Below are positions 1-47,254 of a stretch of DNA of 64,000 nt, piece after piece. Position 1 is the first letter of the stretch. Every line of letters starts with the position of its first letter. Location: positions 147,085-211,084 of the IMG/VR virus record IMGVR_UViG_3300017991_000001. One strand, 5' to 3'. The position numbers were made by a program, and so were the translations under genes. The notes beneath the pieces were generated by a model, which worked only from the letters and a program-made list of their open reading frames with translations, had not been told where the DNA came from and did no database searches.

Positions 1-140
1 ACATGCCGGAGATGGAAGACAACCTTCGCAACGTCTTCAAGAACCTGGGCGAGCTGGCCCTGTTCCTGAAGCAGAAGACGATCGAGCCGGACGAAGCCGA
101 CAGTGGGGAGGCGGAACTGACAAACGTCCTGGCATCATGA
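1..140 (+). CDS. 3' end of a gene truncated by the window edge (hypothetical)
   Basis: Frame from base 3 reads MPEMEDNLRNVFKNLGELALFLKQK...LAS to TGA 138-140, with GC3-rich codons; next ATG at 142. Confidence 0.7.
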   Translation, partial: MPEMEDNLRNVFKNLGELALFLKQKTIEPDEADSGEAELTNVLAS

Positions 141-979: not shown

Positions 980-2368
980 ATGGAAAAGCTCAGCAAGGAA
1001 AATGAACAGAAGGTCATCGCCGCCATCGAGAGCGCGATCAAGCTGGCCAACGCCGGCTCCACGCCCAACGAGGCGCTGCGCAAGGTGGCCGAGGACAACA
1101 GCTTCACGCCGCCGCTGGTGCGCCGCATGGTCGAGGCCTTCAACGTTTCCAAGACGCTGGCGCACATGAAGCACGCTTCCGGCGAGGACCGCGTGAACTC
1201 CTTCCCGCTGGCCGACGCCGGCGAGATCCTCAAGGAGATGTACCCGGAGAACCCGGTCGCGCCCGCCGACGAGAAGGCTGCCGAGTTCGAGCCGTCCTTC
1301 TACCGGTACCCCGAGCGTCACAACTACATGAAAGAGGCGGCCACGGAAGTCACGCTGCCGCCCCTGGTCGACAAGAAGGCCGAGGCGTACGGGCCCGACC
1401 CGGTCGTGGTGGCGCGCACGCGTGCGGACAGGTTGCAGGGGCTGAGCAAAAGGGCCGACAACAGGCGCTCGGTGTACCGCCAGAAGATCTGGGAGCTGAA
1501 CAGTCTGGTGAAGGAGGGGGGCGCCTATTTCAGGCAGCTCTACCACACCCCGTTTGCCGAGGTCGAACGCAACATGGTCGGCGAGTACGGGGCCATGGGC
1601 AAGACGCTCATGGACATGATCTACAAGGAGGGCCGGCTCAAGGAATCGCGCTACGCCGAGGACGCGCCCGTGCGGCAGTGGCTGTTCGACTCCAAGGCCG
1701 AACCTTACACCCACCTGACCATGGCGCTGAAGGTCGCGTCCGACTCCGTGAAGCTGGTGAAGGAGGCAGCACGGGCCCAGCTCGAGCACGAGAAGTTCGC
1801 ACGGGAGTGCGGCTATCCGCTGCCCGTCGACGACGAGGAGGAGGGTGAGGTCAAGGAGGCGCTTCTTGATGAAGTGCTGCACGAGCACCACACCCCCTTC
1901 GAGGAGAACGCGCTCGCGCCGGCCTCGGAGGTGGCCGAGGACCCTTTTGAGAAAGACGCCGTCCTTCCGGGTCTGCCGGAGACGGCTTTGGCTTCCGGCG
2001 CCATGAGCATCCTGGGCCTGAAGGAGACGGACGAGAAGGACAGGCAGCAGGCGCTCAGCGAGGCGCTGGACCCCGTGCATGAGTCGAAGCTCAGGTCCAT
2101 CTCCACGCAGGCCATGCTGTCCGACTTCATGTCCAACGACCCGATCATCAGCTCCTACTCGCAGGACGACGTCGTGAACGCCTACAACCAGCTGGCGCAG
2201 CTGGCACCGTCCGTGTCGCAGCAGCCCGCGGTGGCGCGCGGCATGCTACGGCGGCTGCTGCAGTCCGAGAGCATCGTGGAACCGCACGAGGCCGGACAGC
2301 TGACGGACGTGGAGACGAAGCTGAGGAAGGGCACACCGGGTATCGCGGAAGTCCCTCCACGCGTTTGA
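980..2368 (+). CDS. hypothetical, probable head-associated protein
   Basis: ATG at 980 right after upstream TGA (MEKLSKENEQ...); many K-x-A motifs (KLA, KVA, KHA, KAA, KEA, KRA, KDA); lies upstream of protease/capsid genes. Confidence 0.7.
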   Translation: MEKLSKENEQKVIAAIESAIKLANAGSTPNEALRKVAEDNSFTPPLVRRMVEAFNVSKTLAHMKHASGEDRVNSFPLADAGEILKEMYPENPVAPADEKAAEFEPSFYRYPERHNYMKEAATEVTLPPLVDKKAEAYGPDPVVVARTRADRLQGLSKRADNRRSVYRQKIWELNSLVKEGGAYFRQLYHTPFAEVERNMVGEYGAMGKTLMDMIYKEGRLKESRYAEDAPVRQWLFDSKAEPYTHLTMALKVASDSVKLVKEAARAQLEHEKFARECGYPLPVDDEEEGEVKEALLDEVLHEHHTPFEENALAPASEVAEDPFEKDAVLPGLPETALASGAMSILGLKETDEKDRQQALSEALDPVHESKLRSISTQAMLSDFMSNDPIISSYSQDDVVNAYNQLAQLAPSVSQQPAVARGMLRRLLQSESIVEPHEAGQLTDVETKLRKGTPGIAEVPPRV

Positions 2369-2380
2369 TCGGAGCCTGAC

Positions 2381-3532
2381 ATGGAGCTGTCCCAAGAACT
2401 CGCCGTGACCTGTGTGGCCGTCAAGGAGGCTTCCGAGAAGGAGGCCATGCCTGGCGTGCCCGCCGCGCTGCCCATGAGCAATGCCCTGGCAGCCCCCGCC
2501 AAGAGCATGGCCGGCCAGGCAACGCAGATGGCCAACCAGCGCGTGGCGCAGGGGCAGGCCACCGAGCGTCAGCAGATCAACGATAAGGAACAACAGGGGC
2601 AAGTCCAGACGGCCAGCCCCATGACCAAGAACATTGCCCCCATCCGTCCCGCGAACATCGGCCAGCCCCTCATACGGCAGGGGTATCAGCCACCCGTGGT
2701 GCGCAATACCTGGTCACCGCCGGTGCCCGTCAAGGCGGCAGCCGACCCCGACCTGACCCAGCTGCGCGCGAAGTTCGAGTCCATGGAAGCCAGGGAACGC
2801 CTGCTGCGTCGGCACGCGCAGAAGTGGGAGGAGTTGTCGGCTGCACGCGCGGCGCGCGAGGAGCCCAGCGCCGTGTCCACGGCGTTACAGCGCATGGCTC
2901 CGGTACCGCACACGATGGGCGAGGCGGCCGTGCGTGCTCCGCTGGCGGCCCTTTCCGGGTACGGCGGATATAGAATGGGCGCCAAGTTGGAGCCGGCCGA
3001 CGTGGAGGAACTGCAGCGCGTGCTGGGCGCTTCCCGCGCCAAGGGCGAGGGGCTGCGCCCGATCGAGCGCAACCTGTCCGACCTGGTCGGTGAGCAACGG
3101 GCAAAGAGACTGGCCAAGGCGTTGCGCCAGGCGGACCCGACCGTGACCGCGCAAGCGCTCAGGGAGGCGGACATCACCGCGCCTGGTGAAGACGTCGCCA
3201 AGCTGCGTAAGCGTATGGGGAAGGCGGTGAAAGGTTCCAAGGGCAAGGCGTTGCGCGGCCTAGCCGGGCGCGCCCGCATCAAGTCCGAGATTTCCAACTT
3301 GTTTCGCCAGGGGCAGAGCCAGCCGCTTGTACCCAAGATGAGACCCTGGCGCATCGGCGGGGCGCTGGGCGGCCTGGCGCTGGGCGGACTGCTGTCCGGC
3401 ATCCCGTACGCGGCACACGCTCTGTACCGCAAGGGCGAGGGCGGCGAGGCGGCCTACCGCGCCGCGCAGCGGGCGAAGGAACTTACCGAGGAGGCTGAGC
3501 GCGTCTCCGCTGAAAGGGAGGCGCTGCTGTGA
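2381..3532 (+). CDS. hypothetical protein, K-x-A-rich N-terminus, basic middle, C-terminal glycine zipper; possible internal head protein
   Basis: GGAG RBS; VKEASEKEA near the N-terminus; IGGALGGLALGGLLSG; TGA overlaps the next GTG. Confidence 0.65.
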   Translation: MELSQELAVTCVAVKEASEKEAMPGVPAALPMSNALAAPAKSMAGQATQMANQRVAQGQATERQQINDKEQQGQVQTASPMTKNIAPIRPANIGQPLIRQGYQPPVVRNTWSPPVPVKAAADPDLTQLRAKFESMEARERLLRRHAQKWEELSAARAAREEPSAVSTALQRMAPVPHTMGEAAVRAPLAALSGYGGYRMGAKLEPADVEELQRVLGASRAKGEGLRPIERNLSDLVGEQRAKRLAKALRQADPTVTAQALREADITAPGEDVAKLRKRMGKAVKGSKGKALRGLAGRARIKSEISNLFRQGQSQPLVPKMRPWRIGGALGGLALGGLLSGIPYAAHALYRKGEGGEAAYRAAQRAKELTEEAERVSAEREALL

Positions 3533-4989
3533 TCAAGGTTATCCGTTCCGACAGCTACGACTTCGACATGCCCGCCGCGTCGCTGGTGCAGGTGTGGTCG
3601 CGCGGCATTGACCGCCACTGGATCACCAAGCGCGCGGCGGTGCTCAACGACGTCGTGCGGGGCATTCAGCCCGAGAAGGGCTTCCAGTACATCCACCTGA
3701 TCACCATGGGGGCGCAGGAGGCATACGGCCCCAACCGCAACGGGGACGGCTTCAACGAGAAGCGGGGCACCTTCGAGCTCCCGTACCCCAAGGACGGCGT
3801 GCCCGTCTACCACATGAGCGGTGGCCTGACCGAGCGGCACAACACCTTCACCAAGAACGCCCACGTCTTCGAGCACCACAAGAACAAGGACCCCAAGAAG
3901 GCCATCGGTTCGGTTCACGCGGACGCCTACAACCCCGAGATGAAGCGGGGCGAGCTGATCGCGAAGGTGCCCGAGAACGACAACTGGCTGCCCCATCTGG
4001 AGAAGCTGGCCAACGGGGAAGATATTCCCTTCAGCATGGCGTGCAAAGTCCCCTATGACGTGTGCACGATCTGCGGGAACAAGGCCAAGTCCCGGGCGGA
4101 ATACTGCAAGCACGCCTCCGACCACCTGACCGAGATCCTGAAGGAAGGCCACCAGTCCTTCGTGATCAACGACCAACCCAACTTCTTCGACATCTCGCGC
4201 GTCTTCCGGCCGGCCGACCGCATCGCCTGGTCGCTCAGGAAAGTGGCCTCGGCGGGGGTCGTTTCGATCAAGTCGGGAGCCCAGTTGGCCGAGGAAGAGG
4301 GGCTGATGTTACCGGAGCGCTTCTGGGACGCGGACAGCCCCGATGCCTCGGCCAAGATCGCCGCCGCGAAGAAGCTGGCCGAGATTGAGAAACTAGTTGA
4401 CGGATCGGCAAGGTCTGTGGACAATGCCGCCCGTTTGAAGGGGTTGGCTTGCGGGTGTCCATCCGAAAACCTTCCCCATGAAGCCATGGAGATCCTTCAG
4501 AAAGCGCAGCTCGGACAGGCGCTACACGGACTGGCGGACGCCAAGATTTGCCTTTCCCTGGAGGACTTCATCAAGCTGGTATCGGGGTCAGAAGCGTGCG
4601 ACTCCGCAGCCGGCGACATCCCTGCCGCAATGGGGGTGCTGCCTGGTGTGTTCAGCCGACTCCTCCGTAATGGGGGAATTGAGGACTGCGCGACGGACTC
4701 GGCGTACGACCCGTCCCGCTCGGCGATACCCAGGTGCATCCGGGAGGCTTTAGCTCCACTGGCAGACGGACACTCGATGTCGGCCGGTCCAGCTACGCGG
4801 CGCATGCAAATCACCATCATTCGCGCGACGCCCAAACCTTCCAAAGCACCCGTGAAACTCGCTTCCACCTCAAAGTCTGCTGAGCGCTTGGCCAGGGAGT
4901 ACGCCAAGTACCAGCTTTCGTTCGTTGCAGCAGCGGGAAGGGACGACGAACTGGTTCACGGGCTGACGGTCCTGCGCAACCACACTTGA
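3529..4989 (+). CDS. putative prohead (capsid maturation) protease
   Basis: GPNRNGDGF, HVFEHHKN and FSMACKVPYDVCTICGN motifs (candidate catalytic His/Ser plus CxxC) as in large-phage prohead proteases; directly precedes scaffold-like and capsid genes. Confidence 0.6.
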   Translation: MIKVIRSDSYDFDMPAASLVQVWSRGIDRHWITKRAAVLNDVVRGIQPEKGFQYIHLITMGAQEAYGPNRNGDGFNEKRGTFELPYPKDGVPVYHMSGGLTERHNTFTKNAHVFEHHKNKDPKKAIGSVHADAYNPEMKRGELIAKVPENDNWLPHLEKLANGEDIPFSMACKVPYDVCTICGNKAKSRAEYCKHASDHLTEILKEGHQSFVINDQPNFFDISRVFRPADRIAWSLRKVASAGVVSIKSGAQLAEEEGLMLPERFWDADSPDASAKIAAAKKLAEIEKLVDGSARSVDNAARLKGLACGCPSENLPHEAMEILQKAQLGQALHGLADAKICLSLEDFIKLVSGSEACDSAAGDIPAAMGVLPGVFSRLLRNGGIEDCATDSAYDPSRSAIPRCIREALAPLADGHSMSAGPATRRMQITIIRATPKPSKAPVKLASTSKSAERLAREYAKYQLSFVAAAGRDDELVHGLTVLRNHT

Positions 4990-5038
4990 AGACGCGGGAC
5001 GTTTTTACAGTCATCACAGTCCTCTAGGAGGCAGACGG

Positions 5039-6310
5039 ATGAGCAATCAGAGTCTCATGGCCATGATGGACACGCTCCTCAAGCAGGCCAATGACGTGGA
5101 AAAGGAAGCGCTTTCCGACGTCTCGGGCCCCGAACCGACGACCCATCCGGTCATGTCGGCCGACGATGGCACGCAGGCTGCCACCGAGGGGGCGAGAAGT
5201 TCCGAGAACGAAAGCGACGCTCGCGAGGAACACGGCGACCTGGCCGTCACCGGACAGGAGGACGCCGAGAGTGCCGAGGCCGGTGAGAAGGACGAAGCCG
5301 ACAGTATCGGCACCGAGACATCAGATTCGGACGAGATGCGAGGGAACGTGGAGCAGCCCAAGGCCACGAAGGACGCCCCGCCGGACAGCGGCCCGGGCGA
5401 CCACACCTTCTCCGAGAAGTACTCCGCCGCGGCCATCGTGGATTCGGGCAACAAGCTGCTCGCCGCGCTGGGCAACCTCACCGGACAGCACAAGCAGGCC
5501 GATGAGAAGAAGGAAGGCGAGGAGAAGAAGGACAAGAAGAAGGATGAGAAGGGCGAAGCGTGTGACGACGGAGAGAACTGCGACAAGAGCGCTTCCGAAC
5601 AGGAAAAGCGCGCCGCGGCCGAGAAGTATCAGGAGGACGCGGAAGCAGGGTACGTCGCCGCCCAAATGATCGCCGAGCAGCTGATGAGCAAGCAGGCTGA
5701 GGAGGAAGAGCTCGTCAAGCTGGCGGAGAACATCATCAAGACCGCGCACGCTGACGCGGATCTCCTCTGCGAATTCCTGGACAGCCACGAGAAGGGTGTC
5801 AAGGGCCTGGAGGCCGTCAAGAAGGCGTCTCTCAAGAAGAAGGCGCAGCCTCCCATGGGCGCGCTGCCTGCCATGGGTGGCGGCGGTGAGCTTGGCCCCG
5901 AAGCCGGCGGCATGATCCCCCCGGAAGCACTGGCGGCGGGCGCTCCCCCCGAGGAGCTTCCTCCCGAAGCGGGCATGGAAGGCGCGCCCGGTGACGAAGA
6001 GGCGGCGATCGACGCCCTGGCCGATGCACTGGCCGAAGCGGGCGTGACCCCGGAAGAGCTGGCTGAAACCATCGCCGAGGCGGGTGGTGAAGGCGAAGTC
6101 GCACCCGAAGGCCTCGAAGAGGGCATGGAGGAAGAGGCCCCCGCAGAGGTGCCCGGAGAGGTCGTTGAAGACGCAGCCGAAGGGGCTGCCGAGGGTGCTG
6201 CTGAAGGCGCCACCGAGGGAACCGAAGAGGCGGAGGAGGAGGCGCCCAAGGCTGCCTCTATGAGCAAGCAGAGCATCAAGGAGGCTTTGCTGAACATCGC
6301 ACGGGGCTAA
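5039..6310 (+). CDS. putative capsid scaffolding protein
   Basis: Very acidic, low complexity, E/A/G/P-rich; about a dozen K-x-A sites; lies between protease and capsid; AGGAGG RBS. Confidence 0.6.
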   Translation: MSNQSLMAMMDTLLKQANDVEKEALSDVSGPEPTTHPVMSADDGTQAATEGARSSENESDAREEHGDLAVTGQEDAESAEAGEKDEADSIGTETSDSDEMRGNVEQPKATKDAPPDSGPGDHTFSEKYSAAAIVDSGNKLLAALGNLTGQHKQADEKKEGEEKKDKKKDEKGEACDDGENCDKSASEQEKRAAAEKYQEDAEAGYVAAQMIAEQLMSKQAEEEELVKLAENIIKTAHADADLLCEFLDSHEKGVKGLEAVKKASLKKKAQPPMGALPAMGGGGELGPEAGGMIPPEALAAGAPPEELPPEAGMEGAPGDEEAAIDALADALAEAGVTPEELAETIAEAGGEGEVAPEGLEEGMEEEAPAEVPGEVVEDAAEGAAEGAAEGATEGTEEAEEEAPKAASMSKQSIKEALLNIARG

Positions 6311-6359
6311 ACAAGCCGATTGTCGTTCGCGAGTCTGCAAGGATCAAGGAGATAGGACA

Positions 6360-6743
6360 ATGGCGAAGGTCGAAGTCGATACCAAGGTCCTCGAAGCTGT
6401 GGTGGACTATGTCGAGCAGGCGACCGGCTACGCTCAGAAGCAGGCGGAGATTGAAAAAGCCGTCGCGGAGCGGGGCCCCGAGGTTGTCGATGCGCTCATC
6501 AAGGCAGGGTTCGTCACCGAGGACAAACGCGAGTCGGCCATCCGAGCAACCAGTGACCCGAGGAAGGTGCTCGAGTCGCTGGAGAAGACGGCGAAGCTCA
6601 AGGCCGGACGCAAGAGCGCGTCAGCGCCGGAACCGTTGGGTACCGGTGAAGACGTCAAGGAAGCTGGCGTGCAAAGGCCGGGGGACACGTCTCCCGCGAT
6701 GGCCGCCGCCAACGACAGGTTCATGCGCGCAATAGGCTTCTGA
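6360..6743 (+). CDS. small head-module protein (scaffold-like)
   Basis: AAGGAG RBS; KQA/KTA/KSA/KEA sites; position in the head cluster. Confidence 0.6.
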   Translation: MAKVEVDTKVLEAVVDYVEQATGYAQKQAEIEKAVAERGPEVVDALIKAGFVTEDKRESAIRATSDPRKVLESLEKTAKLKAGRKSASAPEPLGTGEDVKEAGVQRPGDTSPAMAAANDRFMRAIGF

Positions 6744-6811
6744 GAGAGGTCCGCGCTCAAACGGCGTTAGAGACAGTGACAGGAAACCTCAGGATTTAGG
6801 AGGAGACCAAG

Positions 6812-7318
6812 ATGCCGGGCACCAACGTTCCTGGACAGATGTACGACCACGAGCTCAATCCCGTAAAAGGGTGGCCGAGCCCGTACGCGGTCGACAAGAT
6901 CGCCGAGATCGCTTCAGGCGTCGAGGGTATCCTCGGCGGCATGGTGATCTCACTGGATGCCAACGGAAAGTTCATTCGGGGCGCCGACGGCTCGGCCATG
7001 CCGTGCTTCGCGTTTCCGAACGCGTCGGACTTCGATGTGCTGTCCGATCGCGGGAACATTTCCGGCGGAAACATGATGGGCCTCGTGGCCGTTGGCGCCT
7101 ACGAACTCGAGAGTACCGAGTACATGGGCTCCGGCTTCGCGGTCAACACGCCGCTGACCGCGCACAACGTTGCCGGTGACGATCAGGGCAAACTCAAGGT
7201 TACGACCTTGGGCAGCTCCGACCTCATCGTTGGCGTCTGCAACCGCGGCCCGACGGCGAACGAGTACAACAAGGAGATGGTCCGCTTCTGGCCTGTCTAT
7301 CTGCCCAAGCGTGCGTAA
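6812..7318 (+). CDS. putative capsid cement/decoration protein
   Basis: 168 aa, Gly-rich and beta-like; strong AGGAGGAG RBS; sits shortly upstream of the major capsid gene, a typical decoration position. Confidence 0.5.
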   Translation: MPGTNVPGQMYDHELNPVKGWPSPYAVDKIAEIASGVEGILGGMVISLDANGKFIRGADGSAMPCFAFPNASDFDVLSDRGNISGGNMMGLVAVGAYELESTEYMGSGFAVNTPLTAHNVAGDDQGKLKVTTLGSSDLIVGVCNRGPTANEYNKEMVRFWPVYLPKRA

Positions 7319-7356
7319 GCGCTTCACCCTGAACATCCGTTTGGAGGTGAGGGCTG

Positions 7357-7737
7357 ATGGACAAAAAGTGTGCAGCGTACCTGATCAAGGAGGCGACCCG
7401 GCCATACGCCCGGGGTAGCTCCGGGGGTCGAGTCATCCCCGTGCCAGGTATGCAGGAGGCCGTCGCTGCAGCCACCCGGCAGGGTATCGGCAGGAAGACG
7501 CCCCCTGCGGGCGGCGGAGGAGGAGGTGGCGGCTTTCTGGCCCCCTTCCGCCGGATGGGTTGGCGGCGGGGCTTGCGAGCGGCCGGCATCGGAGGCGGTA
7601 TCGGTGCCCTCCTTTGGGGCTTGGGCCATCTGTGGGCGAACAAGAATCGCCCCAGCGTGTCCGAGAACGTCACGCAAAACCTCAACGCGAGGATGCGTGG
7701 AGCTGGAGAAGAAGGCATTTACATGAAACCTCAGTAA
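7357..7737 (+). CDS. leader-bearing small basic glycine-zipper protein
   Basis: GGAGG RBS; N-terminus MDKKCAAYLIKEA; Gly run; AAGIGGGIGALLWGLG hydrophobic segment. Confidence 0.7.
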   Translation: MDKKCAAYLIKEATRPYARGSSGGRVIPVPGMQEAVAAATRQGIGRKTPPAGGGGGGGGFLAPFRRMGWRRGLRAAGIGGGIGALLWGLGHLWANKNRPSVSENVTQNLNARMRGAGEEGIYMKPQ

Positions 7738-7803
7738 TTGGTGCGGGCAGCTGCCAAGAGCGCATCCCGCGAGACGTAAGGCCAATTGATAAGGAGACAG
7801 GCC

Positions 7804-8751
7804 GTGGCTAACCCAACTGCGAGCGAGCCGACCTCTCGGATGGTCAACGATGCATTCATCGATCAGTTGGCCAGCGGGAACGACCGGATCGTGAAGGAAG
7901 CCCAGGACGCGATCAACGATTACGTCCGGGTAAGGATGCGTGAAGATGGCTTCTGGCGGAGAATCCTCCCGCCGGTGACCATCACCAACGACGAGCTGGA
8001 TCGGCAGGTGGACACCGACAAGCCCGTCAAGGTGGTCGACAAGGAACCTGAGAGCCCTGCGGCGATCAGCGTGCCTTTTGCCTCGCTGCCCATGAACCGG
8101 TACATCCGCGGGCCCCGGTTCCGCGTGATGTTCGACCGCATCCTGACGCCCAAGTTCACGAAGGACGTGGACGAGCTCAGGACCTACGACATGGACATCC
8201 GGCAGATCCTGTCGGACAACTCCATCAAGGACATGCTGGCCGAAGAAGACGGCAAGGCGATTGCCACCGTCAACTTCCTGCTCCTCGGCGTCAACACGCC
8301 CCTGGCCGAGACGGGCGTCGCGCAGTGGGTTGCCATCTCCGGTGGCGTCACCCGCGACAACCTGGCTGAAGCCATGAAGGTGCTCCCCCGCACCCCGAAC
8401 CACCTGAACGTGGCCACGGTGTTGGTCAACAACGTCACCATCTGGGACGTTGTCAAGTTCGGGCGCGACGAGGTCGGTGGTGACCTGTCCCAGGACCTGT
8501 TCGAGAACGGGTTCGCGGAGCGGGAGCTGCTCGGCCGGCGCTGGATCGTCACGATCAAGCGGGACCTGGTGCCTGACAGCACCATCTTCCTGTTTGCCGC
8601 GCCGAAGTTCCTCGGCAAGTTCTTCGTGCTCGAGGACACGACGATGTACATTGATCGCCGTGCCTTCATGCTCGAGTTCTTCGCGTACGAGAGCATTGGC
8701 TCCTCGATCGCGAACGTGGCCGGCATCGGGCGTGTCGACTTCGAGCCCTAA
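7804..8751 (+). CDS. major capsid protein (probable HK97 fold)
   Basis: GTG at 7804 after AAGGAG; ~315 aa; VRVRMREDGFWRRILPP and C-terminal FFAYESIGSSIANVAGIGRVDF resemble large-phage capsid proteins; follows protease and scaffold; followed by a hairpin. Confidence 0.7.
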   Translation: MANPTASEPTSRMVNDAFIDQLASGNDRIVKEAQDAINDYVRVRMREDGFWRRILPPVTITNDELDRQVDTDKPVKVVDKEPESPAAISVPFASLPMNRYIRGPRFRVMFDRILTPKFTKDVDELRTYDMDIRQILSDNSIKDMLAEEDGKAIATVNFLLLGVNTPLAETGVAQWVAISGGVTRDNLAEAMKVLPRTPNHLNVATVLVNNVTIWDVVKFGRDEVGGDLSQDLFENGFAERELLGRRWIVTIKRDLVPDSTIFLFAAPKFLGKFFVLEDTTMYIDRRAFMLEFFAYESIGSSIANVAGIGRVDFEP

Positions 8752-8795
8752 GCTCGCGCCGTAGGTCTGTGTGTAGCAGGCTTGCACCCTAACCC

Positions 8796-8819
8796 GGGCG
8801 GTCGGTGATCCGGCCGCCC
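8796..8819 (+). terminator. GC-rich hairpin after the capsid gene (attenuator or stabilising stem, no U tract)
   Basis: GGGCGGTCGG-TGAT-CCGGCCGCCC inverted repeat. Confidence 0.4.
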
Positions 8820-8850
8820 CTATGCAAAACGAGCACTCGAGGAGAGTCCG

Positions 8851-9183
8851 ATGAGTCAGGAAATGACCCAGGAGGACGCGGCGCTGTTCGAGAACGTGTA
8901 CGCGCCCGCCTTCGCCCAGAAGATGGCCTCCAACGGCCGCCCGCTCCACGACGACGAGTCGATGGAGCACGCGCTGGAGCTGACGGCGCGGGTGAAGCAG
9001 GAGGTGCAGTCTTCCGACGCCAACTCGATCAAGGAAGCCAACCTGGCTTTCCGCAAGGCGACCGGCGCGGACGAGCGCGATGCCGAAGAGGCTCGCGAGA
9101 CCAGCACCAAGGAGGCTGCCCGCAAGCTGGCGGCCGACCCCGGCTTCAGGCAGATGCTGGAAGCGGCGCGCAGCGCCCAGTAG
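8851..9183 (+). CDS. hypothetical head-module protein
   Basis: GAGGAG RBS; repeated KEA/KMA/KLA. Confidence 0.7.
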   Translation: MSQEMTQEDAALFENVYAPAFAQKMASNGRPLHDDESMEHALELTARVKQEVQSSDANSIKEANLAFRKATGADERDAEEARETSTKEAARKLAADPGFRQMLEAARSAQ

Positions 9184-9697: not shown

Positions 9698-9943
9698 ATG
9701 AGAACGACCATCACTAACACTTCGGGCGCGGAAAAGACCTTCGGGTGGATTCCTCCGCACGGGCACACCTTGGCGAACGGAGCATCCGTCGTCATTGAGG
9801 GCGACCTGCGCACGATCCTGGGAGGCGGCCGTGGTCGATACTCCAGGGGTCAGGAGCTTGCGGGCCTCAACGACGCGGTCACCCGCGGCCAAGTGACGGA
9901 AGAGGAGACCGTCGGTCCGTCCAGCTCTTCGAGCAGCGCCTAA
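9698..9943 (+). CDS. small protein with FGWIPPHG domain and C-terminal poly-Ser
   Basis: GAGGAG RBS; homologous to the N-terminus of the 59643 protein; ends GPSSSSSSA. Confidence 0.7.
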   Translation: MRTTITNTSGAEKTFGWIPPHGHTLANGASVVIEGDLRTILGGGRGRYSRGQELAGLNDAVTRGQVTEEETVGPSSSSSSA

Positions 9944-11573: not shown

Positions 11574-12710
11574 ATGAATCACCGGGCTTACTTGTTTAAG
11601 GAAGCAGCCAAGTGGTCTCGCCGCTTGATGGGTATGCTACGTTCTGCGACCCCCAAGAGGCGTAAACGCTTACTTAATCAATTCTACGAAGGTCATCTTC
11701 CTGAAAAGGGAATGGTGAGTCGGTATGGCTTAGAGGACGATCTAAGGGAGATGCAAACGTATAGTAGAGCACTGGAAAGGGCCGAGGATGCTTCAGAAGC
11801 GATGTCAGGATTGAAACAGCGTATGATAGAAAGAAAGATCCCTGTTCCGAAAACTGCCCCCACTCCAAAGGGCTTTCGTGACTATGGGTATGGTATGTCA
11901 GGTGCACGCACCATCGCTTCCGACCTGACAGAAGTGTTCCCTAAAGCAAAGAGATCAAAGATAAAAGGCATTGTGAAAAGAAGTCCGGCCGCTTTGTACA
12001 AATACCTGGCAAGTCAAGTTAGCGCTTATCCAATGAGTCCTGAAAGACGGTGGGGTGCCAATAGTCTACTGGAAAAGTGGCTTGTGTCGGGCAAAGGGAA
12101 AGCATTCAAACCACGTCCACCGCATAAGTATATGAAGACGCATAAGACAAAAGGGGGCAAAGTTGTCACGGAGGAATATAAGAAAAAGCAACCCGAGTAT
12201 CAGCCCGAAGCACACGTCTGGAGAGGCTATGGTTCGGACCGTCCTCTGCTTGCTCGTACAAGCGATGTTTTTGTTTCACCACACCCGCAAGTGGCAACAA
12301 GTTTTGGTGACCTCGTGGCCCGCATCCCTTTATCCCGATACGGCAACGTAAAGTATAGCCCGGACGTGGGGCTGAAATTTGAAGGTGCTGTTTCCTCTGG
12401 GTATAAGTGGCGTAAGAAGCGCCTTGCAAAGATCAAAAAAAGAATGTTGAAGGGGAAAGGATACAAGAAGTTCATCTACCCCGGAATGAACGCTCCCCTT
12501 CGAGATTATGAAACCGTTTTACCGACAGTGGGACCAAAGGACATCGGGGAGCTGTACAGCAGCCATGACTACAAACTGCACCCGCTTCGTTTGAAACTGC
12601 CGAAAAGGATGCAGACTGCAGGCAAGCGGACAGTACCGGCTACTGGCGAGAATCTGCTTTCACATCCCGTTACGAAGTCATTGTCTGAATTTGTAACACC
12701 AATCATGTAG
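11574..12710 (+). CDS. leader-bearing, AT-richer basic protein with ADP-ribosyltransferase-like motifs
   Basis: Starts MNHRAYLFKEA; HVWRG ... VFVSPHPQVATSFG ... RDYETVL; codon usage differs visibly from the flanks. Confidence 0.55.
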   Translation: MNHRAYLFKEAAKWSRRLMGMLRSATPKRRKRLLNQFYEGHLPEKGMVSRYGLEDDLREMQTYSRALERAEDASEAMSGLKQRMIERKIPVPKTAPTPKGFRDYGYGMSGARTIASDLTEVFPKAKRSKIKGIVKRSPAALYKYLASQVSAYPMSPERRWGANSLLEKWLVSGKGKAFKPRPPHKYMKTHKTKGGKVVTEEYKKKQPEYQPEAHVWRGYGSDRPLLARTSDVFVSPHPQVATSFGDLVARIPLSRYGNVKYSPDVGLKFEGAVSSGYKWRKKRLAKIKKRMLKGKGYKKFIYPGMNAPLRDYETVLPTVGPKDIGELYSSHDYKLHPLRLKLPKRMQTAGKRTVPATGENLLSHPVTKSLSEFVTPIM

Positions 12711-13710: not shown

Positions 13711-13956
13711 ATGGCCGGTAAGGAAGAGCAAGTCAAAGAGGCGGAAGCCAACATCCAGGAGCGCCTGCAGGCGTTCGACTACGGGATGGAACTCTTCTTC
13801 AAGGAAGCGGGCATCGAGAAAGCCGCGGTTGCGCAGGCCGTCGGTCTCGAAGAGCAGGACCTTGCCCCGAAGTCGGCACGATGGCTGAAGGAACAGATGG
13901 AGGCGGCGAACAAGGAAGCAGAGAGCAAAGACGCCGCCCCGACAAAGGAGGAGTAG
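13711..13956 (+). CDS. small acidic protein with repeated K-x-A
   Basis: AAGGAG RBS then ATG 13711 (MAGKEEQVKEA...FFKEAGIEKAA). Confidence 0.7.
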   Translation: MAGKEEQVKEAEANIQERLQAFDYGMELFFKEAGIEKAAVAQAVGLEEQDLAPKSARWLKEQMEAANKEAESKDAAPTKEE

Positions 13957-17606: not shown

Positions 17607-18308
17607 ATGGATTACAGGGGATACCTGATCAAGCAGGCGGCAGCGGGGCTTGTTGGCGAACAGGCCCCCGCGCCCGCTTCATGGTTTCTCAACCCCGTGA
17701 ACAAGGGGGATCGGGTACGCAAGTTCCTGAAGAACAGGAAGATCCAAAAGAGTCTCCAGAAGGAGGCGATGGGGCTGCGGCGGGCGCAACGTTTGGCGCG
17801 CCTGATGCGCAGCGGAAAGTTCAGCAAGCGCCGGGAGGTGTTCAAGCAGAAGCACGGGATTGAGACGCGGCATCCCTACGAGACAGCGCTGCATGACGTC
17901 AGGCGCAGGCTGCTGCGCCGGCAGCCGGAGAAGGCTTTTGGGGTGTTGACGGACCCGGACGTGCGGGACACGCTAAAGTATGTGGCGCGCAAGGGGCGCA
18001 ACCCGCTGGAACACCTGGAGCGCATGGGCGCCACGTCGAAGGCGGAACTGTTGGGGTTGGGGTTCCCGCCTGGCGTGCGACCGCCTGTCGGGTTGGGCGT
18101 GTTCGACCCGCTGCACAAGATCAAGGGTCGGTACCGGGGCGGCCAGGCAGCCAGCCGACCCATGGGTGCCTTGCCTGGCAGCCGGGTGATCGGGGCGCGG
18201 GAGAGTGCGCTGCCCGCGATACAGTTCGCCAAGGTCAAGGCCAAGGTGAAGGCGCCCGGCGGCAAATGGAAGAAGCGCAAGATGCGGATCGAGGACATGC
18301 CTGCATAA
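17607..18308 (+). CDS. leader-bearing highly basic protein inserted between sheath and tube
   Basis: AAGGAG RBS; starts MDYRGYLIKQA; very K/R-rich. Confidence 0.75.
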   Translation: MDYRGYLIKQAAAGLVGEQAPAPASWFLNPVNKGDRVRKFLKNRKIQKSLQKEAMGLRRAQRLARLMRSGKFSKRREVFKQKHGIETRHPYETALHDVRRRLLRRQPEKAFGVLTDPDVRDTLKYVARKGRNPLEHLERMGATSKAELLGLGFPPGVRPPVGLGVFDPLHKIKGRYRGGQAASRPMGALPGSRVIGARESALPAIQFAKVKAKVKAPGGKWKKRKMRIEDMPA

Positions 18309-30654: not shown

Positions 30655-31464
30655 ATGAACGCGAAAGCTTATCTCATCAAGCAGGCCGTCGAACCCATCG
30701 AGCTCCTCATGGGCGGCGGCACGTTGGGAGGTGGCTACCTGGCCGGCGAGTTGGCCGACGCGGGCGCGAACACGATGCTGAGCGACGTGGTGGCCCGTCA
30801 GATCGAGCGGTCCGCCGGCAAGATGTCGCCCAAGGAGCGGCGTGCCATACAAAAGGGCATTGGCGGGGTGAAGAAGGTACCCGTGCATGTCGTGGGCCCG
30901 AAAAAGCTTCACCACGGCAGCGAATACTTCGCGGCCGTGCCCGGCAAAAAGGGTATCGGCGAGGTGGTGATAACGAAACGCACGCCCGACTTCGTGTTGG
31001 CCCACGAGTTGGGGCACGCGAAGGTAAAGCCTACGTTCTTCAGCAAACGGATGTCGCGGTTGGAAGGATTATCCGAACGCCACGGCAAGATGTTGGGCGG
31101 CGGGGCCGGCGCGCTGTGGGCGGCACTCAGTGCCGACCCGGAAGAGAGCGCGCTGCGCACGGGCGTGGAAAGCGGCCTCAAGGGCGCGCTGACCGGCGTG
31201 GCGTCGCACGCGCCCATCCTCGCACACGAGGGGGCCGCATCGTTCCATGGCCTGCGCGGCATGGCTCGCGCGGGTGTGCCGTGGCGCAGCATGGCCCGTT
31301 CGGTACCCGGACTGGCCGCCCTGTTCGGCACGTACCTGGCTTCGGCCGCCCTACCTTCGGCGGGTGTCGCGGCCGGCGCGGGCCTGATCGCGCGCGAGGT
31401 CAAGAAGCGGCAGCTCAAGAGGGAGCTGCGCAAGGCTCGGCGGGAGGGCAAGCTTGGACGCTAA
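30655..31464 (+). CDS. leader-bearing HExxH zinc metallopeptidase-like membrane protein
   Basis: MNAKAYLIKQA; VLAHELGHA; downstream HEGAAS; Gly-rich hydrophobic helices. Confidence 0.7.
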   Translation: MNAKAYLIKQAVEPIELLMGGGTLGGGYLAGELADAGANTMLSDVVARQIERSAGKMSPKERRAIQKGIGGVKKVPVHVVGPKKLHHGSEYFAAVPGKKGIGEVVITKRTPDFVLAHELGHAKVKPTFFSKRMSRLEGLSERHGKMLGGGAGALWAALSADPEESALRTGVESGLKGALTGVASHAPILAHEGAASFHGLRGMARAGVPWRSMARSVPGLAALFGTYLASAALPSAGVAAGAGLIAREVKKRQLKRELRKARREGKLGR

Positions 31465-32086
31465 AGCCTACCTGATCAAGCAGGCCACGACGGTCGGTCG
31501 CCTGGCACGCATCGCCAAGCGGCATGGCATACCACTGGTCGGCGACTGGCGCTACGCGGCCAAGCTGCTGGGTCGGCAGGCCACGCCCAAGGGCAAGGCG
31601 CATTACCGGCGCGCGGCCGGCCTGATCGAGCCGGGCGAACGAAAGATCCTGCGCCGCCTACAGGCGAAGACCAAGGACCCCTTGGCAGAGCTCGGCGTGC
31701 AGCGCCTGCCGGGGGAGCGCCGGCTCGGGGTCATGGGAGATCGTACCGGCTTGGAGGTGACTGAGGGTGCCGTGCGTACGGTTCATACACACCCGGAAGC
31801 AGTGGAAAAGGTATTGGGGGTGGACCTTCCGCCTTTCAGGAGGAACCGGCTGGGGCAGGTGTTCCCCTCGAGCGGGCTGGACTACCGTTACAAGAAGTTC
31901 ATGCCCAAGACGATTAGGGAAGCCATAGCGGACCTAAAGAAGGGACCCTACTTCTTCAAGCACGACCTGGGTGATCTGGAAGATAACTTAGGACTGACCC
32001 ACGCCATCCTGGACCCGAGCACGGGCGTGCAGTCGGTGATAAAAGGTGGTCGGGGTAAGCTGAGAAGGCTGTTCTTCAAGGAGTGA
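31454..32086 (+). CDS. leader-bearing basic protein with a JAB/MPN-like motif
   Basis: TTG start with GGAGG; MDAKAYLIKQA; VHTHP...FPSSGLD...HAIL. Confidence 0.6.
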   Translation: MDAKAYLIKQATTVGRLARIAKRHGIPLVGDWRYAAKLLGRQATPKGKAHYRRAAGLIEPGERKILRRLQAKTKDPLAELGVQRLPGERRLGVMGDRTGLEVTEGAVRTVHTHPEAVEKVLGVDLPPFRRNRLGQVFPSSGLDYRYKKFMPKTIREAIADLKKGPYFFKHDLGDLEDNLGLTHAILDPSTGVQSVIKGGRGKLRRLFFKE

Positions 32087-32088
32087 TG

Positions 32089-32853
32089 ATGAACCCGCGC
32101 GCGTACCTCTTGAAGAGGGCCAAGGACCTGGACGCGGATCTGTCCACGGCGGGCCAGCTCATGACCGGAAACGTGCTGGGTGGCATAGGGGGAGGCTTGG
32201 CTGCCGCCGGTTCAACAGGTCTCCTGGCAAAGGTGCTCATGCCGGGGCTGGGCAGCCTGGCCGGGCCCGTTTCTTCATCGGAGCGCAAGCAGCTTCAAAA
32301 GGCCATGGGCGTCAAGAAGGTGCCCGTGAAGACGCTCAACCCTTTCAAGATGCCCGTGGAAGGGGAGCACTTCGACCCACAAGCAGGCAAGCGTGGAAAG
32401 GTGGTGATCTCCAAACGTTCGCCGGATTACATCCTGGCGCACGAGCTGGGCCACGCGCAGGACCCCGCCTGGACCAGCCCGAGGATGATGAGGGTTTACG
32501 ACATCGCAAGGGATGTAGGAATTCCATTGGGCAGTCTGGCCGGTTCCATCTGGGCCGCGCACGGCGCGGACCCGGAGGATAGCGTAGCCCGCACGGCAGT
32601 CGAGAGCGCGTTGAAAGGTGCCGCAGGTGGAACGGTCGGGTTCTCGCCCGTACTCGCCAGAGAGACGGTGGCATCCTTGCGGGGTTTCCAGGGGATGTAC
32701 AACGCGGGCATGCCTTGGCATAGGATACTCCGGTCAGCGCCCGGTTTGGCAGTGGGCATCCTCACATACATAGCCACGGGGGCGCTACCCGCTGCCGGCG
32801 CGGCAGTGGGTACGGGCCTTGCCGCCAGAGAGCTGAAGAAAGAGGAAGACTAG
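32089..32853 (+). CDS. leader-bearing HExxH metallopeptidase-like protein (paralogue of 30655)
   Basis: MNPRAYLLKRA; GVKKVPV, ILAHELGHA, ADPEDS..RTAVES.LKGA and G.PW..I.RS.PGLA shared with the 30655 protein. Confidence 0.75.
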   Translation: MNPRAYLLKRAKDLDADLSTAGQLMTGNVLGGIGGGLAAAGSTGLLAKVLMPGLGSLAGPVSSSERKQLQKAMGVKKVPVKTLNPFKMPVEGEHFDPQAGKRGKVVISKRSPDYILAHELGHAQDPAWTSPRMMRVYDIARDVGIPLGSLAGSIWAAHGADPEDSVARTAVESALKGAAGGTVGFSPVLARETVASLRGFQGMYNAGMPWHRILRSAPGLAVGILTYIATGALPAAGAAVGTGLAARELKKEED

Positions 32854-34485: not shown

Positions 34486-34854
34486 ATGAATCATCGGGCT
34501 TTCCTGCTTAAAGAGGCTGTGCAGAAGCGGTCCTACAGTCTGCTTCTGGGCCCTGTCGGCGGTGGTGCCGTGGGGGGCACCATGGCCGCACGGAACATCG
34601 ATCCCGAGCACAAGGAACGCATCAAGAAGATCCTGTACGGCGTGATGTACGGCACCGGCGGCGGCCTGATAGGAGGGGTGGGCGGACAGCTGGCCGGCGG
34701 CGCGGTGGGCGGTTTCGGTGGCAAGCACATCGGCAGGTTGGGGGGTATGGGGAGAGTCGGCGGAGCGGCCGGCATGACCCTCGGGGCGCTGCTGGGGGCC
34801 TTCGGAGGCATGGCTGCGGGCGGGCGCCTGGGCGGCATTAAAGCATCGGAATAG
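34486..34854 (+). CDS. leader-bearing glycine-zipper protein
   Basis: GAGG RBS; MNHRAFLLKEA; repeated GxxxG hydrophobic helices. Confidence 0.75.
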   Translation: MNHRAFLLKEAVQKRSYSLLLGPVGGGAVGGTMAARNIDPEHKERIKKILYGVMYGTGGGLIGGVGGQLAGGAVGGFGGKHIGRLGGMGRVGGAAGMTLGALLGAFGGMAAGGRLGGIKASE

Positions 34855-47198: not shown

Positions 47199-47254
47199 TC
47201 TTCCGCCATTCATCAGTATATTCGATACCCCTTAAGAACTTCGCGGAGAAAACC

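What the first reader, a model, noticed from the sequence alone, without database searches (positions are those of the whole stretch)
980..9183. Pervasive K-x-A motif in head-module proteins points to the prohead protease specificity
Seen: KQA/KEA/KTA/KVA/KLA/KSA/KRA recur densely in the 980, 2381, 5039 (TLLKQA near the N-terminus, mirroring the leader end), 6360, 8851 and 13711 proteins, and in the protease after its catalytic half (LRKVAS, AKIAAAKKLA, VKLAS). They appear sparser in sheath, tube and baseplate proteins. The 10970 (MEKEA) and 55641 (VEKAA) proteins have it near their N-termini. Inference: K-x-A is the cleavage site, analogous to [ILV]-x-E in T4, and marks proteins that enter the prohead.
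Basis: partly seen in the sequence, partly recalled or inferred. Interest (0 to 1): 0.65.

Follow-up and report, generated by a model that had tools for sequence, protein, structure and literature searches.

The report
Predicted cleavage motif of jumbo-phage head protease
In this 211-kb phage and its distant relatives, the short pattern Lys-x-Ala is about three times too frequent in the proteins encoded beside the head-maturation protease, and it sits at conserved propeptide boundaries, so it is very probably where that protease cuts; this specificity has not been described for a phage.

Summary
K-A, K-xx-A, K-xxx-A and A-x-K are at expectation. The tail and baseplate block (37 against about 40) and the rest of the genome (197 against 193) are at expectation.

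The 3529-4989 protein has the T4 gp21 / herpesvirus assemblin fold and belongs to an uncharacterised family of more than 1000 proteins. In 110 members H117, S169 and K238-x-A240 never vary. K238-x-A240 lies in the one disordered linker after the catalytic domain.

The HK97-fold capsid protein has one K-x-A, kept in 118 of 120 homologs, exactly where a variable N-terminus meets the conserved body.

In a fixed test (protease plus two genes each side) K-x-A ranks first of about 280 residue pairs in 10 of 13 lineages with GC from 31 to 65%. These include Salmonella phage Arash, Vibrio phage D69 and mycobacteriophage Catera. The same scan on T4 returns the known I/L-x-E motif.

The fuller motif is hydrophobic-x-K-x-A then S/A/E. 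Cleavage itself is inferred, not observed. I rate it a new variant of a known kind.

The parts
1..140 (+). 3' end of an 863-residue protein (G000 144633-147224; L005:16634-19225). It has 13 K-x-A against 4.8 expected, mostly in poorly conserved linkers. The N- and C-terminal domains are conserved. Function unknown; portal identity not shown.
   Evidence: ortholog slot 52 / 18.8; no Pfam, PHROG or tblastn match
980..2368 (+). 462-residue helical protein with 12 K-x-A sites (3.5 expected). Several sites keep their position in six orthologs while the surrounding sequence diverges. Proposed prohead core or scaffold-like substrate.
   Evidence: (orthologs 58 / 20.5)
2381..3532 (+). 383-residue protein, not enriched overall (3 / 3.85). 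One N-terminal K-x-A at residues 15-19 is kept in all five orthologs. Proposed short N-terminal propeptide.
3529..4989 (+). Prohead maturation protease. Residues 1-235 have the T4 gp21 / herpesvirus assemblin fold. A disordered linker (236-245) and a helical C-terminal domain follow. 10 K-x-A sites (4.1 expected).
   Evidence: AlphaFold2 model, mean pLDDT 86.8; VIA-align Z 11.3 to 5JBL_B, then VZV, PrV, HSV-2, HCMV, EBV and KSHV proteases; Foldseek top three hits are gp21; 1061 homologs without a Pfam domain
3877..3879 (+). His117, invariant in 110 homologs. Proposed catalytic His.
   Evidence: the catalytic role is inferred, since no residue-level superposition on gp21 was available
4033..4035 (+). 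Ser169, invariant in 110 homologs. Proposed catalytic Ser, 52 residues after His117.
   Evidence: role inferred
3628..3636 (+). K34-R-A36 of the protease, kept in 94% of homologs. Proposed N-terminal autoprocessing site.
4240..4248 (+). K238-V-A240 of the protease (context LRKVAS). K and A are invariant in 110 homologs. It lies inside the only pLDDT<50 linker just after the catalytic domain. Proposed release-type autocleavage site.
5039..6310 (+). 423-residue acidic, low-complexity protein in the scaffold position, with 13 K-x-A sites (5.6 expected). One site lies 7 residues from the C-terminus, and a near-C-terminal site is kept in 4 of 7 orthologs.
   Evidence: (orthologs 70 / 32)
6360..6743 (+). 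127-residue protein with 4 sites (2.0 expected). An N-terminal K-x-A at residues 20-40 is kept in all seven orthologs.
   Evidence: (23 / 9.2)
7357..7737 (+). 126-residue Gly-rich protein that begins with the leader MDKKCAAYLIKEA.
   Evidence: the same slot in L012 and L016 carries YLIKEA
7804..8751 (+). Major capsid protein with the HK97 fold. The likely start is GTG at 7804 (315 residues). The predicted mature form starts after residue 33 and has 282 residues.
   Evidence: phrog_2522 at E 4e-5; model matches HK97 Head II at E 2.7e-10; P0121 gives the start
7894..7902 (+). K-E-A, the only K-x-A in the capsid protein. It falls in the same alignment column in 11 divergent capsid proteins and in 118 of 120 closer homologs (K 100%, A 98%, x variable). 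It marks the step from a variable N-terminus to a conserved body (mostly 90% identity or more).
8851..9183 (+). 110-residue protein with 4 sites (1.2 expected).
   Evidence: (16 / 5.8)
13711..13956 (+). 81-residue protein with 6 sites (1.75 expected). The start codon is uncertain.
55652..57055 (-). 467-residue protein (the true start may be 25 codons downstream) with 17 K-x-A sites (4.7 expected), the strongest excess in the window. It lies outside the head module. Predicted head-internal substrate.
   Evidence: no PHROG or tblastn match; one weak Pfam hit below its cut-off (DUF6582, E 0.0035)
11574..12710 (+). Protein beginning with the leader MNHRAYLFKEA.
17607..18308 (+). Protein beginning with the leader MDYRGYLIKQA.
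30655..31464 (+). Protein beginning with the leader MNAKAYLIKQA. Paralog of 32083-32853.
31454..32086 (+). Protein beginning (TTG start) with the leader (M)DAKAYLIKQA.
32083..32853 (+). Protein with the leader MNPRAYLLKRA (Met at 32089).
34486..34854 (+). Protein beginning with the leader MNHRAFLLKEA.

Best explanation
K-x-A is the core of the recognition site of this phage's prohead maturation protease (3529-4989). The fuller form is [L/F/M/I]-x-K-x-A followed by S, A or E. The protease is a serine protease of the T4 gp21 / herpesvirus assemblin fold.

Proposed mechanism, with each step marked:
1. The protease is co-assembled into the prohead through its helical C-terminal domain (inferred).
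2. It frees its catalytic domain by cutting the invariant K238-V-A240 linker, and trims its N-terminus at K34-R-A36 (inferred from conservation and the model).
3. It removes a propeptide of about 33 residues from the HK97-fold capsid protein at K31-E-A33 (inferred from the conservation step).
4. It cuts the core or scaffold-like proteins at many sites so that the pieces can leave or rearrange. These are 980, 5039, 6360, 8851, 13711, 55652(-) and the 863-residue upstream protein (inferred from the three-fold excess, by analogy with T4 gp22).
5. It trims an 11-residue N-terminal leader ending in K-x-A from at least eight small proteins (inferred).

The scissile bond is most likely after the Ala (P3 Lys, P1 Ala, P1' Ser/Ala/Glu). 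This rests on analogy with [LI]-x-E| in T4 and (V/L/I)-x-A|S in herpesviruses.

Shown here: the statistical excess, its spacing and frame specificity, its conservation, the protease fold, and the invariant residues. Not shown: any actual cleavage.
For: 1. Excess over composition with global and local shuffles, and only at spacing 2. It is specific to the reading frame.
2. The excess is confined to the head-module genes and two further proteins. The rest of the window is 65 / 72.4 and the genome outside the window 197 / 193.
3. The enriched proteins are not paralogs of one another.
4. Six syntenic relatives with 43-81% protease identity keep the excess in the same ortholog slots. The flanking slots (142, 2381, 6812, capsid protein, tail) are at expectation.
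5. In a pre-specified test of the protease plus two genes each side, K-x-A ranks first of about 280 testable pairs in 10 of 13 lineages and second or third in the other three. GC content ranges from 31 to 65%.
6. The fold matches T4 gp21 at Z 11.3, rmsd 3.0 over 147 residues, followed by seven herpesvirus protease entries.
7. H117 and S169 are invariant, and K238 and A240 are invariant inside the only disordered linker.
8. The capsid protein's single site is conserved exactly at the boundary between variable and conserved sequence.
9. The flanks are non-random over 454 sites: Leu x3.2 at P5, Ser x3.5 at P1', and Pro and Gly depleted at P2.
10. Positive control: the same scan on T4 gp67, gp68, gp21 and gp22 gives IxE (z 4.3) and LxE (z 3.8) as the top two pairs, and nothing of the kind in gp20, gp23, gp24 and gp19.
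11. In SPN3US, whose sites were mapped by mass spectrometry, propeptides likewise carry multiple copies of the protease's motif (PMC10052503).
Against: - No proteomic or biochemical evidence of cleavage exists for this phage or any relative. The Arash virion study reports only coverage and spectral counts, and its supplement holds no peptide-level data.
- Several conserved K-x-A columns lie inside the folded catalytic domain (residues 109 and 159). Either they are not cut or they are self-inactivation sites.
- In the capsid model the K-E-A lies at the start of a helix rather than in a loop, and the model's confidence there is low, pLDDT 54-59.
- There is no sequence-level link to gp21: Pfam is blank and hhalign gives probability 0.1.
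- The assignment of H117 and S169 as catalytic was not checked by residue-level superposition.
- Leader-bearing genes sit in the baseplate block. That is unexpected for head-internal proteins.
Confidence: 0.75

Rival explanations
1. K-x-A is a docking or assembly motif rather than a cleavage site. For example, it could be a short helix-surface pattern by which core proteins, the protease tail and the capsid protein's N-arm bind a common partner inside the prohead. It could also be a site where the Lys is modified or cross-linked.
For: The excess and its conservation show selection on the motif but do not show what acts on it. Many sites lie in predicted helices. Conserved sites exist inside the protease's folded domain.
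Against: The invariant K238-x-A240 lies in a disordered interdomain linker, where other prohead and herpesvirus proteases release themselves (PMC4498786). The capsid site sits exactly at a conservation step typical of a propeptide boundary. The preference for small residues at P1 and P1', and the exclusion of Pro and Gly at P2, look like protease subsites. The same statistic recovers a true cleavage motif in T4.
Confidence: 0.12
2. The motif is a cleavage site, but either the cut is made after the Lys (K|x-A, trypsin-like, as HK97 cuts after a Lys) or a different protease makes it (a host enzyme or a second phage protease).
For: The position of the scissile bond is not fixed by any result here. 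One relative encodes a Peptidase_S8 gene 4 kb upstream of the protease (L015).
Against: The excess travels with this protease family across hosts as different as Salmonella, Vibrio, a Bacillus-type host and Mycobacterium, which argues against a host enzyme. The S8 gene is present in only one of the six syntenic loci. The strict Ala two residues after Lys and the Ser/Ala/Glu preference after it fit P1/P1' better than P2'/P3'. The closest structural relatives with mapped sites cut after the third residue of an x-x-x triplet.
Confidence: 0.1
3. The excess is a by-product of composition, helical periodicity, shared ancestry of the proteins, or a DNA-level motif.
For: The enriched proteins are rich in Lys, Ala and Glu and are largely helical.
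Against: Local 15-residue shuffles give the same z (7.4). K-A, K-xx-A, K-xxx-A and A-x-K are at expectation. The enriched proteins share no detectable similarity. The DNA pattern is confined to one frame on one strand. The signal persists in a 31.6% GC relative in which Ala is about 5% of residues.
Confidence: 0.02

Closest known systems
T4 gp21 prohead protease and its [L/I]-x-E cleavage motif (also phiKZ gp175 and SPN3US gp245, with a small residue at P3, Glu at P1 and Ser favoured at P1')
   Same: Same fold (Z 11.3 to 5JBL). The gene sits beside the scaffold and capsid genes. The motif is a three-residue P3-x-P1 pattern that is over-represented in core and scaffold proteins and present once at the capsid protein's propeptide end. 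Self-processing sites are predicted at both ends of the catalytic domain. The enrichment scan recovers IxE and LxE in T4. SPN3US propeptides carry multiple motif copies (PMC10052503).
   Different: P1 is Ala rather than Glu, and P3 is Lys rather than a hydrophobic or small residue. No sequence similarity is detectable (Pfam blank; hhalign probability 0.1). A helical domain of about 245 residues follows the catalytic domain. LxE and IxE are not among the eight most enriched gap-2 pairs listed for these proteins; the phiKZ-type A/S/G-x-E pairs are also absent from that list.
Herpesvirus assemblin (pUL26 / VP24), with its release (R) and maturational (M) sites
   Same: The fold matches VZV, PrV, HSV-2, HCMV, EBV and KSHV proteases at Z 4.6-8.2. 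The architecture is a protease domain, then an autocleavage site at about residue 240, then a C-terminal assembly domain, like the R-site of pUL26 (PMC4498786). The inferred P1 Ala and P1' Ser preference matches the herpesvirus (V/L/I)-x-A|S consensus, which I give from my own knowledge and did not retrieve here. The scaffold-position protein 5039 has a site 7 residues from its C-terminus, which resembles an M-site.
   Different: P3 is Lys, not Val, Leu or Ile. Whether there is a Ser-His-His triad is unknown; only one invariant His (H117) was singled out. The sites are far more numerous. The host is bacterial. Membership of one family is not claimed, only a shared fold and a similar P1/P1' preference.
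T4 capsid targeting sequence (the roughly 10-residue N-terminal leader of internal proteins IPI-III, removed by gp21)
   Same: At least eight small proteins start with an 11-residue conserved leader, M-[DN]-x-[KR]-[AG]-[YF]-L-[ILF]-K-[EQR]-A. It ends exactly in the inferred protease motif.
   Different: Neither targeting nor removal is shown. Four of the genes lie in the baseplate gene block. The T4 comparison is from my own knowledge.
HK97 gp4 protease and gp5 delta domain
   Same: The capsid protein has the HK97 fold (E 2.7e-10 to 2FT1). The predicted mature length of 282 residues equals that of mature HK97 gp5 (from my own knowledge).
   Different: The propeptide is about 33 residues, against the 103-residue delta domain. 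Separate scaffold-like proteins are present here.

Membership tests
Prohead / capsid maturation serine proteases of the gp21-assemblin fold | Assemblin-type beta-barrel fold of the catalytic domain | tested here: met
   AlphaFold2 model with mean pLDDT 86.8. VIA-align Z 11.3, rmsd 3.0, 147 of 164 residues to T4 gp21 (5JBL_B); herpesvirus proteases at Z 4.6-8.2.
Prohead / capsid maturation serine proteases of the gp21-assemblin fold | Conserved catalytic His and Ser | tested here: inconclusive
   H117 and S169 are invariant in 110 homologs, in the order His then Ser and 52 residues apart. No residue-level superposition on the gp21 catalytic residues could be made.
Prohead / capsid maturation serine proteases of the gp21-assemblin fold | Sequence match to the curated family models (Pfam Peptidase_S77, S78, S80, S21) | tested here: not met
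   No Pfam family at E <= 0.01. Only phrog_2774, of unknown function. hhalign of the family profile against T4 gp21 gives probability 0.1. None of the 120 listed homologs carries a protease Pfam domain.
Prohead / capsid maturation serine proteases of the gp21-assemblin fold | Gene placed among the scaffold and major capsid genes | tested here: met
   The order protease, acidic scaffold-like protein, small proteins, HK97-fold capsid protein is kept in the six syntenic metagenomic relatives; the protease lies a few genes upstream of the capsid gene in Arash, D69, phage G and Catera too. Distant homologs are annotated as capsid or head maturation proteases: Stormageddon gp13 and phage G gp19 (PMC12484599).
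Prohead / capsid maturation serine proteases of the gp21-assemblin fold | Proteolytic activity on capsid and scaffold proteins, and autoprocessing | not testable with these tools
   Needs mass spectrometry or an enzyme assay.
T4 / phiKZ-type substrate motif (x-x-Glu|) | [L/I]-x-E or [A/S/G]-x-E over-represented in core proteins | tested here: not met
   In the enriched set the top gap-2 pairs are KxA (z 10.7), ExL, LxK and SxS. No x-x-E pair is among the eight listed. The scan does detect IxE and LxE in T4 itself.
Herpesvirus-type substrate motif ((V/L/I)-x-A|S) | Ala at P1 with Ser at P1' | tested here: inconclusive
   Ser is the most enriched residue after K-x-A (23% of sites, x3.5), with Ala and Glu next. 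The scissile bond is not known.
Herpesvirus-type substrate motif ((V/L/I)-x-A|S) | Hydrophobic residue at P3 | tested here: not met
   P3 is Lys by definition of the enriched pair. The hydrophobic preference is at P5 instead (Leu x3.2).
HK97-fold major capsid proteins | HK97 fold | tested here: met
   The model (pLDDT 72.3) matches HK97 Head II, 2FT1_G, at E 2.7e-10 and probability 1.00, along with many other capsid proteins and encapsulins.

The most novel reading that the evidence does not exclude
This family of more than 1000 jumbo-phage proteases has a herpesvirus-like way of working. It cuts after Ala before Ser, releases itself at an R-site-like linker at about residue 240, and has a scaffold with a near-C-terminal M-like site. 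That would make it a closer functional counterpart of herpesvirus assemblin than any characterised phage protease. In addition, the 11-residue leader M-x-x-K-A-Y-L-I-K-x-A would be a removable address tag that loads at least eight proteins into the capsid, including proteins encoded among the baseplate genes.
Probability: 0.3. Interest if true: 0.8.

Novelty: new variant of a known kind. Interest (0 to 1): 0.68.

Why it matters
Prohead proteases decide which parts of a phage head survive into the virion. Their specificity is known for only a few model phages (T4, phiKZ/SPN3US, HK97).

Here a specificity is predicted from sequence alone for a large family with no annotation. The family includes cultured phages: Salmonella phage Arash, Vibrio phages D69, D148 and D181, and more distantly Bacillus phage G and the Bxz1-type mycobacteriophages.

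If it is right, it has four uses:
- It predicts mature N-termini and propeptides for dozens of proteins with no other annotation.
- It flags head-internal proteins encoded elsewhere in the genome, such as 55652-57055(-).
- It offers a short leader that could be tried for packaging foreign proteins.
- It links phage and herpesvirus maturation at the level of substrate preference as well as fold.

The enrichment scan is also a general and cheap way to read protease specificity from uncultured phage genomes.

Tried and rejected
- Pfam and PHROG scans of 20 head-module proteins and 30 tail-region proteins were almost blank. The sheath and tube could not be named. Only a baseplate wedge (28998-30647), an Ig-repeat fibre-like protein (42949-44769), a sigma-like protein (26950-27684) and a glycosyltransferase (47195-49054) were identified.
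- megablast of the first 20 kb against GenBank phages gave no match.
- phmmer of the protease against PDB sequences gave nothing meaningful.
- hhalign of the protease family against T4 gp21 gave no signal.
- tblastn of the 863-residue protein and of 55652-57055(-) against phages gave no match.
- ESM Atlas look-ups for the same two proteins gave only low-confidence models and unnamed viral clusters. Whether the 863-residue protein is the portal remains open.
- The Arash paper and its supplements hold no peptide-level data, so its mass spectrometry cannot test the motif.
- Literature searches for a Lys/Ala prohead-protease motif, and for processing in phage G or Bxz1, found nothing relevant. The library is incomplete, so this is not proof of absence.
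- Explanations by composition, helical periodicity, paralogy or a DNA motif were tested and rejected.
- Not attempted: a protease-substrate complex prediction, because a transient enzyme-peptide contact is a poor case for that test; and sequencing-run or read tools, which do not bear on the question.


Full report
**Setting.** The window is the last 64 kb of a 211,084-bp virus record with direct terminal repeats, a jumbo phage of about 64% GC. Nearly all genes are on the + strand. Pfam and PHROGs recognise almost nothing in the head module. The 3529-4989 protein matches only phrog_2774 (unknown function), and the 7837-8751 protein matches a major-head-protein PHROG weakly.

- 980: 12 against 3.5
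- 3529: 10 / 4.1
- 5039: 13 / 5.6
- 6360: 4 / 2.0
- 8851: 4 / 1.2
- 13711: 6 / 1.75

The 2381 protein is not enriched (3 / 3.85). One is 55652-57055 on the minus strand (17 / 4.7). The other is the 863-residue protein that ends at window base 140 (13 / 4.8).

Shuffling only within 15-residue blocks, which keeps local composition, gives 22.7 (z 7.4). The block from 14032 to 51206, which holds the baseplate and fibre genes, is at expectation (37 against 39-42). So are the other head-module genes (9 / 10-11) and the 200 genes outside the window (197 / 193).

The excess exists only at this spacing. In the seven most enriched proteins K-x-A is 66 / 22.4 (z 10.7) and is the top pair of all. K-A, K-xx-A, K-xxx-A and A-x-K are at expectation or slightly below. 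At DNA level the pattern AAR-NNN-GCN occurs 66 times in frame, 11 and 2 times out of frame, and 10 times on the antisense strand. The enriched proteins show no similarity to one another. Composition, helical periodicity, paralogy and a DNA motif are therefore excluded.

**What is the 3529-4989 protein?** A word-based search found 1061 homologs, none with a protease Pfam domain or a name pointing to one. With 68 of them as alignment, AlphaFold2 gave a model of mean pLDDT 86.8. It has a mixed beta domain (residues 1-235), a disordered stretch (236-245, pLDDT below 50) and a helical C-terminal domain.

Foldseek's three best PDB hits are the three chains of T4 gp21 (probability 0.99). VIA-align gives Z 11.3 (rmsd 3.0, 147 of 164 residues) to gp21. 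VZV, pseudorabies, HSV-2, HCMV, EBV and KSHV proteases follow at Z 4.6-8.2.

In 110 aligned homologs H117 and S169 are invariant, in the His-then-Ser order of this protease class. There is no sequence-level link to gp21. Distant homologs include Gordonia phage Stormageddon gp13, annotated as a capsid maturation protease. They also include Bacillus phage G gp19, listed as a head maturation protease in PMC12484599. I take the protein to be the prohead protease. Assigning H117 and S169 as the catalytic pair is an inference.

**The protease's own sites.** In the same alignment K238 and A240 are invariant, and they lie inside the one disordered linker just after the catalytic domain. K34-x-A36 is kept in 94% of members. 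Further K-x-A columns are kept in 61-81% (residues 109, 159, 276, 282).

A conserved site in the linker after the catalytic domain is what T4 gp21, phiKZ gp175 and herpesvirus pUL26 use to release themselves. For pUL26 this is the R-site (PMC4498786); the other two I cite from my own knowledge.

**The capsid protein.** The 7804/7837-8751 protein models as an HK97 fold, matching HK97 Head II at E 2.7e-10. It has a single K-x-A.

In an alignment of 11 capsid proteins down to 22% identity, that site occupies one column (KEA, KQA, KNA, KTA). The set includes Arash gp226, Vibrio phage D69 and a 31.6% GC metagenomic phage.

In 120 closer homologs K is kept in 100% and A in 98%, while the middle residue varies. 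The 30 residues before the site are poorly conserved and vary in length. Most residues after it are conserved at 90% or more. 103 of the 120 proteins have exactly one K-x-A. This conservation step is the signature of a boundary between propeptide and mature protein. The predicted mature protein has 282 residues.

**Relatives.** I collected these lineages:
- two distant loci from IMG/VR: L008 at 31.6% GC and L009 at 62.5%;
- six syntenic contigs with 43-81% protease identity, L012 to L017;
- Salmonella phage Arash and Vibrio phage D69;
- Bacillus phage G and mycobacteriophage Catera.

In the six syntenic relatives the excess falls in the same ortholog slots:
- 863-residue protein: 52 / 18.8
- 980: 58 / 20.5
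- protease: 73 / 22.4
- 5039: 70 / 32
- 6360: 23 / 9.2
- 8851: 16 / 5.8

The 142, 2381, 6812, capsid and tail slots are at expectation. Alignments show that many sites hold their position while the flanks diverge, and that some sites turn over.

I then fixed a uniform test in advance: the protease plus two genes on each side. K-x-A ranks first of about 280 testable pairs in 10 of 13 lineages. It ranks second in L012 and phage G and third in L013. L-x-K and M-x-K recur among the runners-up, which fits a longer motif.

**Extended motif.** Over 454 sites the flanks are non-random:
- P5: Leu, Phe, Met or Ile (Leu at 3.2 times its background)
- P4: Glu, Val or Ile
- P2: avoids Pro, Gly and Asn
- the residue after Ala: Ser (3.5 times), Ala or Glu, rarely Ile, Pro, Lys, Val or Leu

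In the window the full pattern occurs 7.95 times per 1000 residues in the eight enriched proteins and 0.64 times elsewhere.

**A leader ending in the motif.** Most of the few full-pattern hits outside the enriched set lie at or near protein N-termini. At least eight proteins begin with M-[DN]-x-[KR]-[AG]-[YF]-L-[ILF]-K-[EQR]-A. They are window 7357, 11574, 17607, 30655, 31454, 32089 and 34486, and one gene 8 kb upstream of the window. L012 and L016 have the same leader in the 7357 slot.

In Arash, D69 and L008 the proteins around the protease carry a K-x-A 10-35 residues from the start. The 2381 slot, though not enriched, keeps one N-terminal site in all five orthologs, and the 6360 slot in all seven. 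The MEKEA of 10970 is not kept.

**Positive control.** The same unbiased scan on T4 gp67, gp68, gp21 and gp22 returns IxE (15 / 5.8, z 4.3) and LxE (16 / 7.0, z 3.8) as the top two pairs. This is the experimentally known gp21 motif. No such signal appears in gp20, gp23, gp24 and gp19. So this statistic does read out a prohead protease's specificity.

In SPN3US, whose sites were mapped by mass spectrometry, propeptides likewise hold several motif copies and Ser is favoured at P1' (PMC10052503).

**Interpretation.** The most economical reading is that [hydrophobic]-x-K-x-A, followed by Ser, Ala or Glu, is this protease family's substrate site. It would serve four purposes: self-release, removal of a short capsid propeptide, fragmentation of core or scaffold-like proteins, and trimming of short leaders.

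Placing the cut after Ala rests on analogy with T4 (P3-x-P1|) and with the herpesvirus (V/L/I)-x-A|S consensus, which I cite from my own knowledge. A cut after Lys cannot be excluded. A docking role for the motif is the main rival.

**What is not shown.** No cleavage product has been seen. The Arash virion proteome gives only coverage and spectral counts, and its supplement has no peptides. I found no paper that describes such a specificity, but the library is incomplete. Identities beyond the protease and the capsid protein remain open; in particular, whether the 863-residue protein is the portal. The sheath and tube could not be named.

**Verdict.** This is a new variant of a known kind: a gp21/assemblin-fold prohead protease family with a Lys/Ala motif in place of the Glu-based motifs of T4 and phiKZ. 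It can be tested at once in cultured phages.

Noticed in passing
window 7357-7737, 11574-12710, 17607-18308, 30655-31464, 31454-32086, 32083-32853, 34486-34854; also G000 139176-139388: Eight proteins share an 11-residue N-terminal leader, M-[DN]-x-[KR]-[AG]-[YF]-L-[ILF]-K-[EQR]-A. Gly-rich hydrophobic stretches often follow. Four of the genes lie directly after the baseplate-wedge gene. 30655 and 32083 are 44% identical paralogs.
   Followed up: partly
protease homologs P0103, P0108, P0119: Some homologs of the protease are 727-833 residues long and carry intein or homing-endonuclease domains (PF14890 and PF13403, or PF14528). This suggests inteins inserted in the protease gene.
   Followed up: no
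L012:885-2729, L014:1970-3808, L016:1421-3259, L017:1574-3436; Arash gp206 and gp216 (L010): An RNA polymerase Rpb1_5-domain gene lies a few genes upstream of the head module in the relatives. In Arash the beta and beta' subunits are among the most abundant proteins in the virion preparation (PMC10585845). This hints at a packaged multisubunit RNA polymerase, as in phiKZ-like phages.
   Followed up: no
window 9698-9943, 10044-10967, 12720-13697, 14791-17598: Several structural-region proteins contain runs of 5-15 serines, at the C-terminus or internally.
   Followed up: no
window 44777-46792: This 671-residue ORF has a clearly lower GC3 (0.66 against 0.85-0.95) and lower GC than its neighbours, and no family match. 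It may be a recent acquisition.
   Followed up: no
window 26950-27684: A protein with an RNA polymerase sigma-factor-like region (phrog_351, E 1.6e-11) is encoded in the middle of the structural gene block.
   Followed up: no
L019 (mycobacteriophage Catera gp94, 1369 residues): In Bxz1-type mycobacteriophages the protease domain is the N-terminal part of a very large protein, which also shows a K-x-A excess (18 / 8.2). This looks like a protease fused to a long scaffold-like region, as in herpesvirus pUL26.
   Followed up: partly
window 3529-4989, residues C179, C182, C193 with D177 and Y192: Three invariant cysteines lie just after the proposed catalytic Ser. They may form a metal site, which I do not recall being described for gp21 or assemblin.
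   Followed up: no
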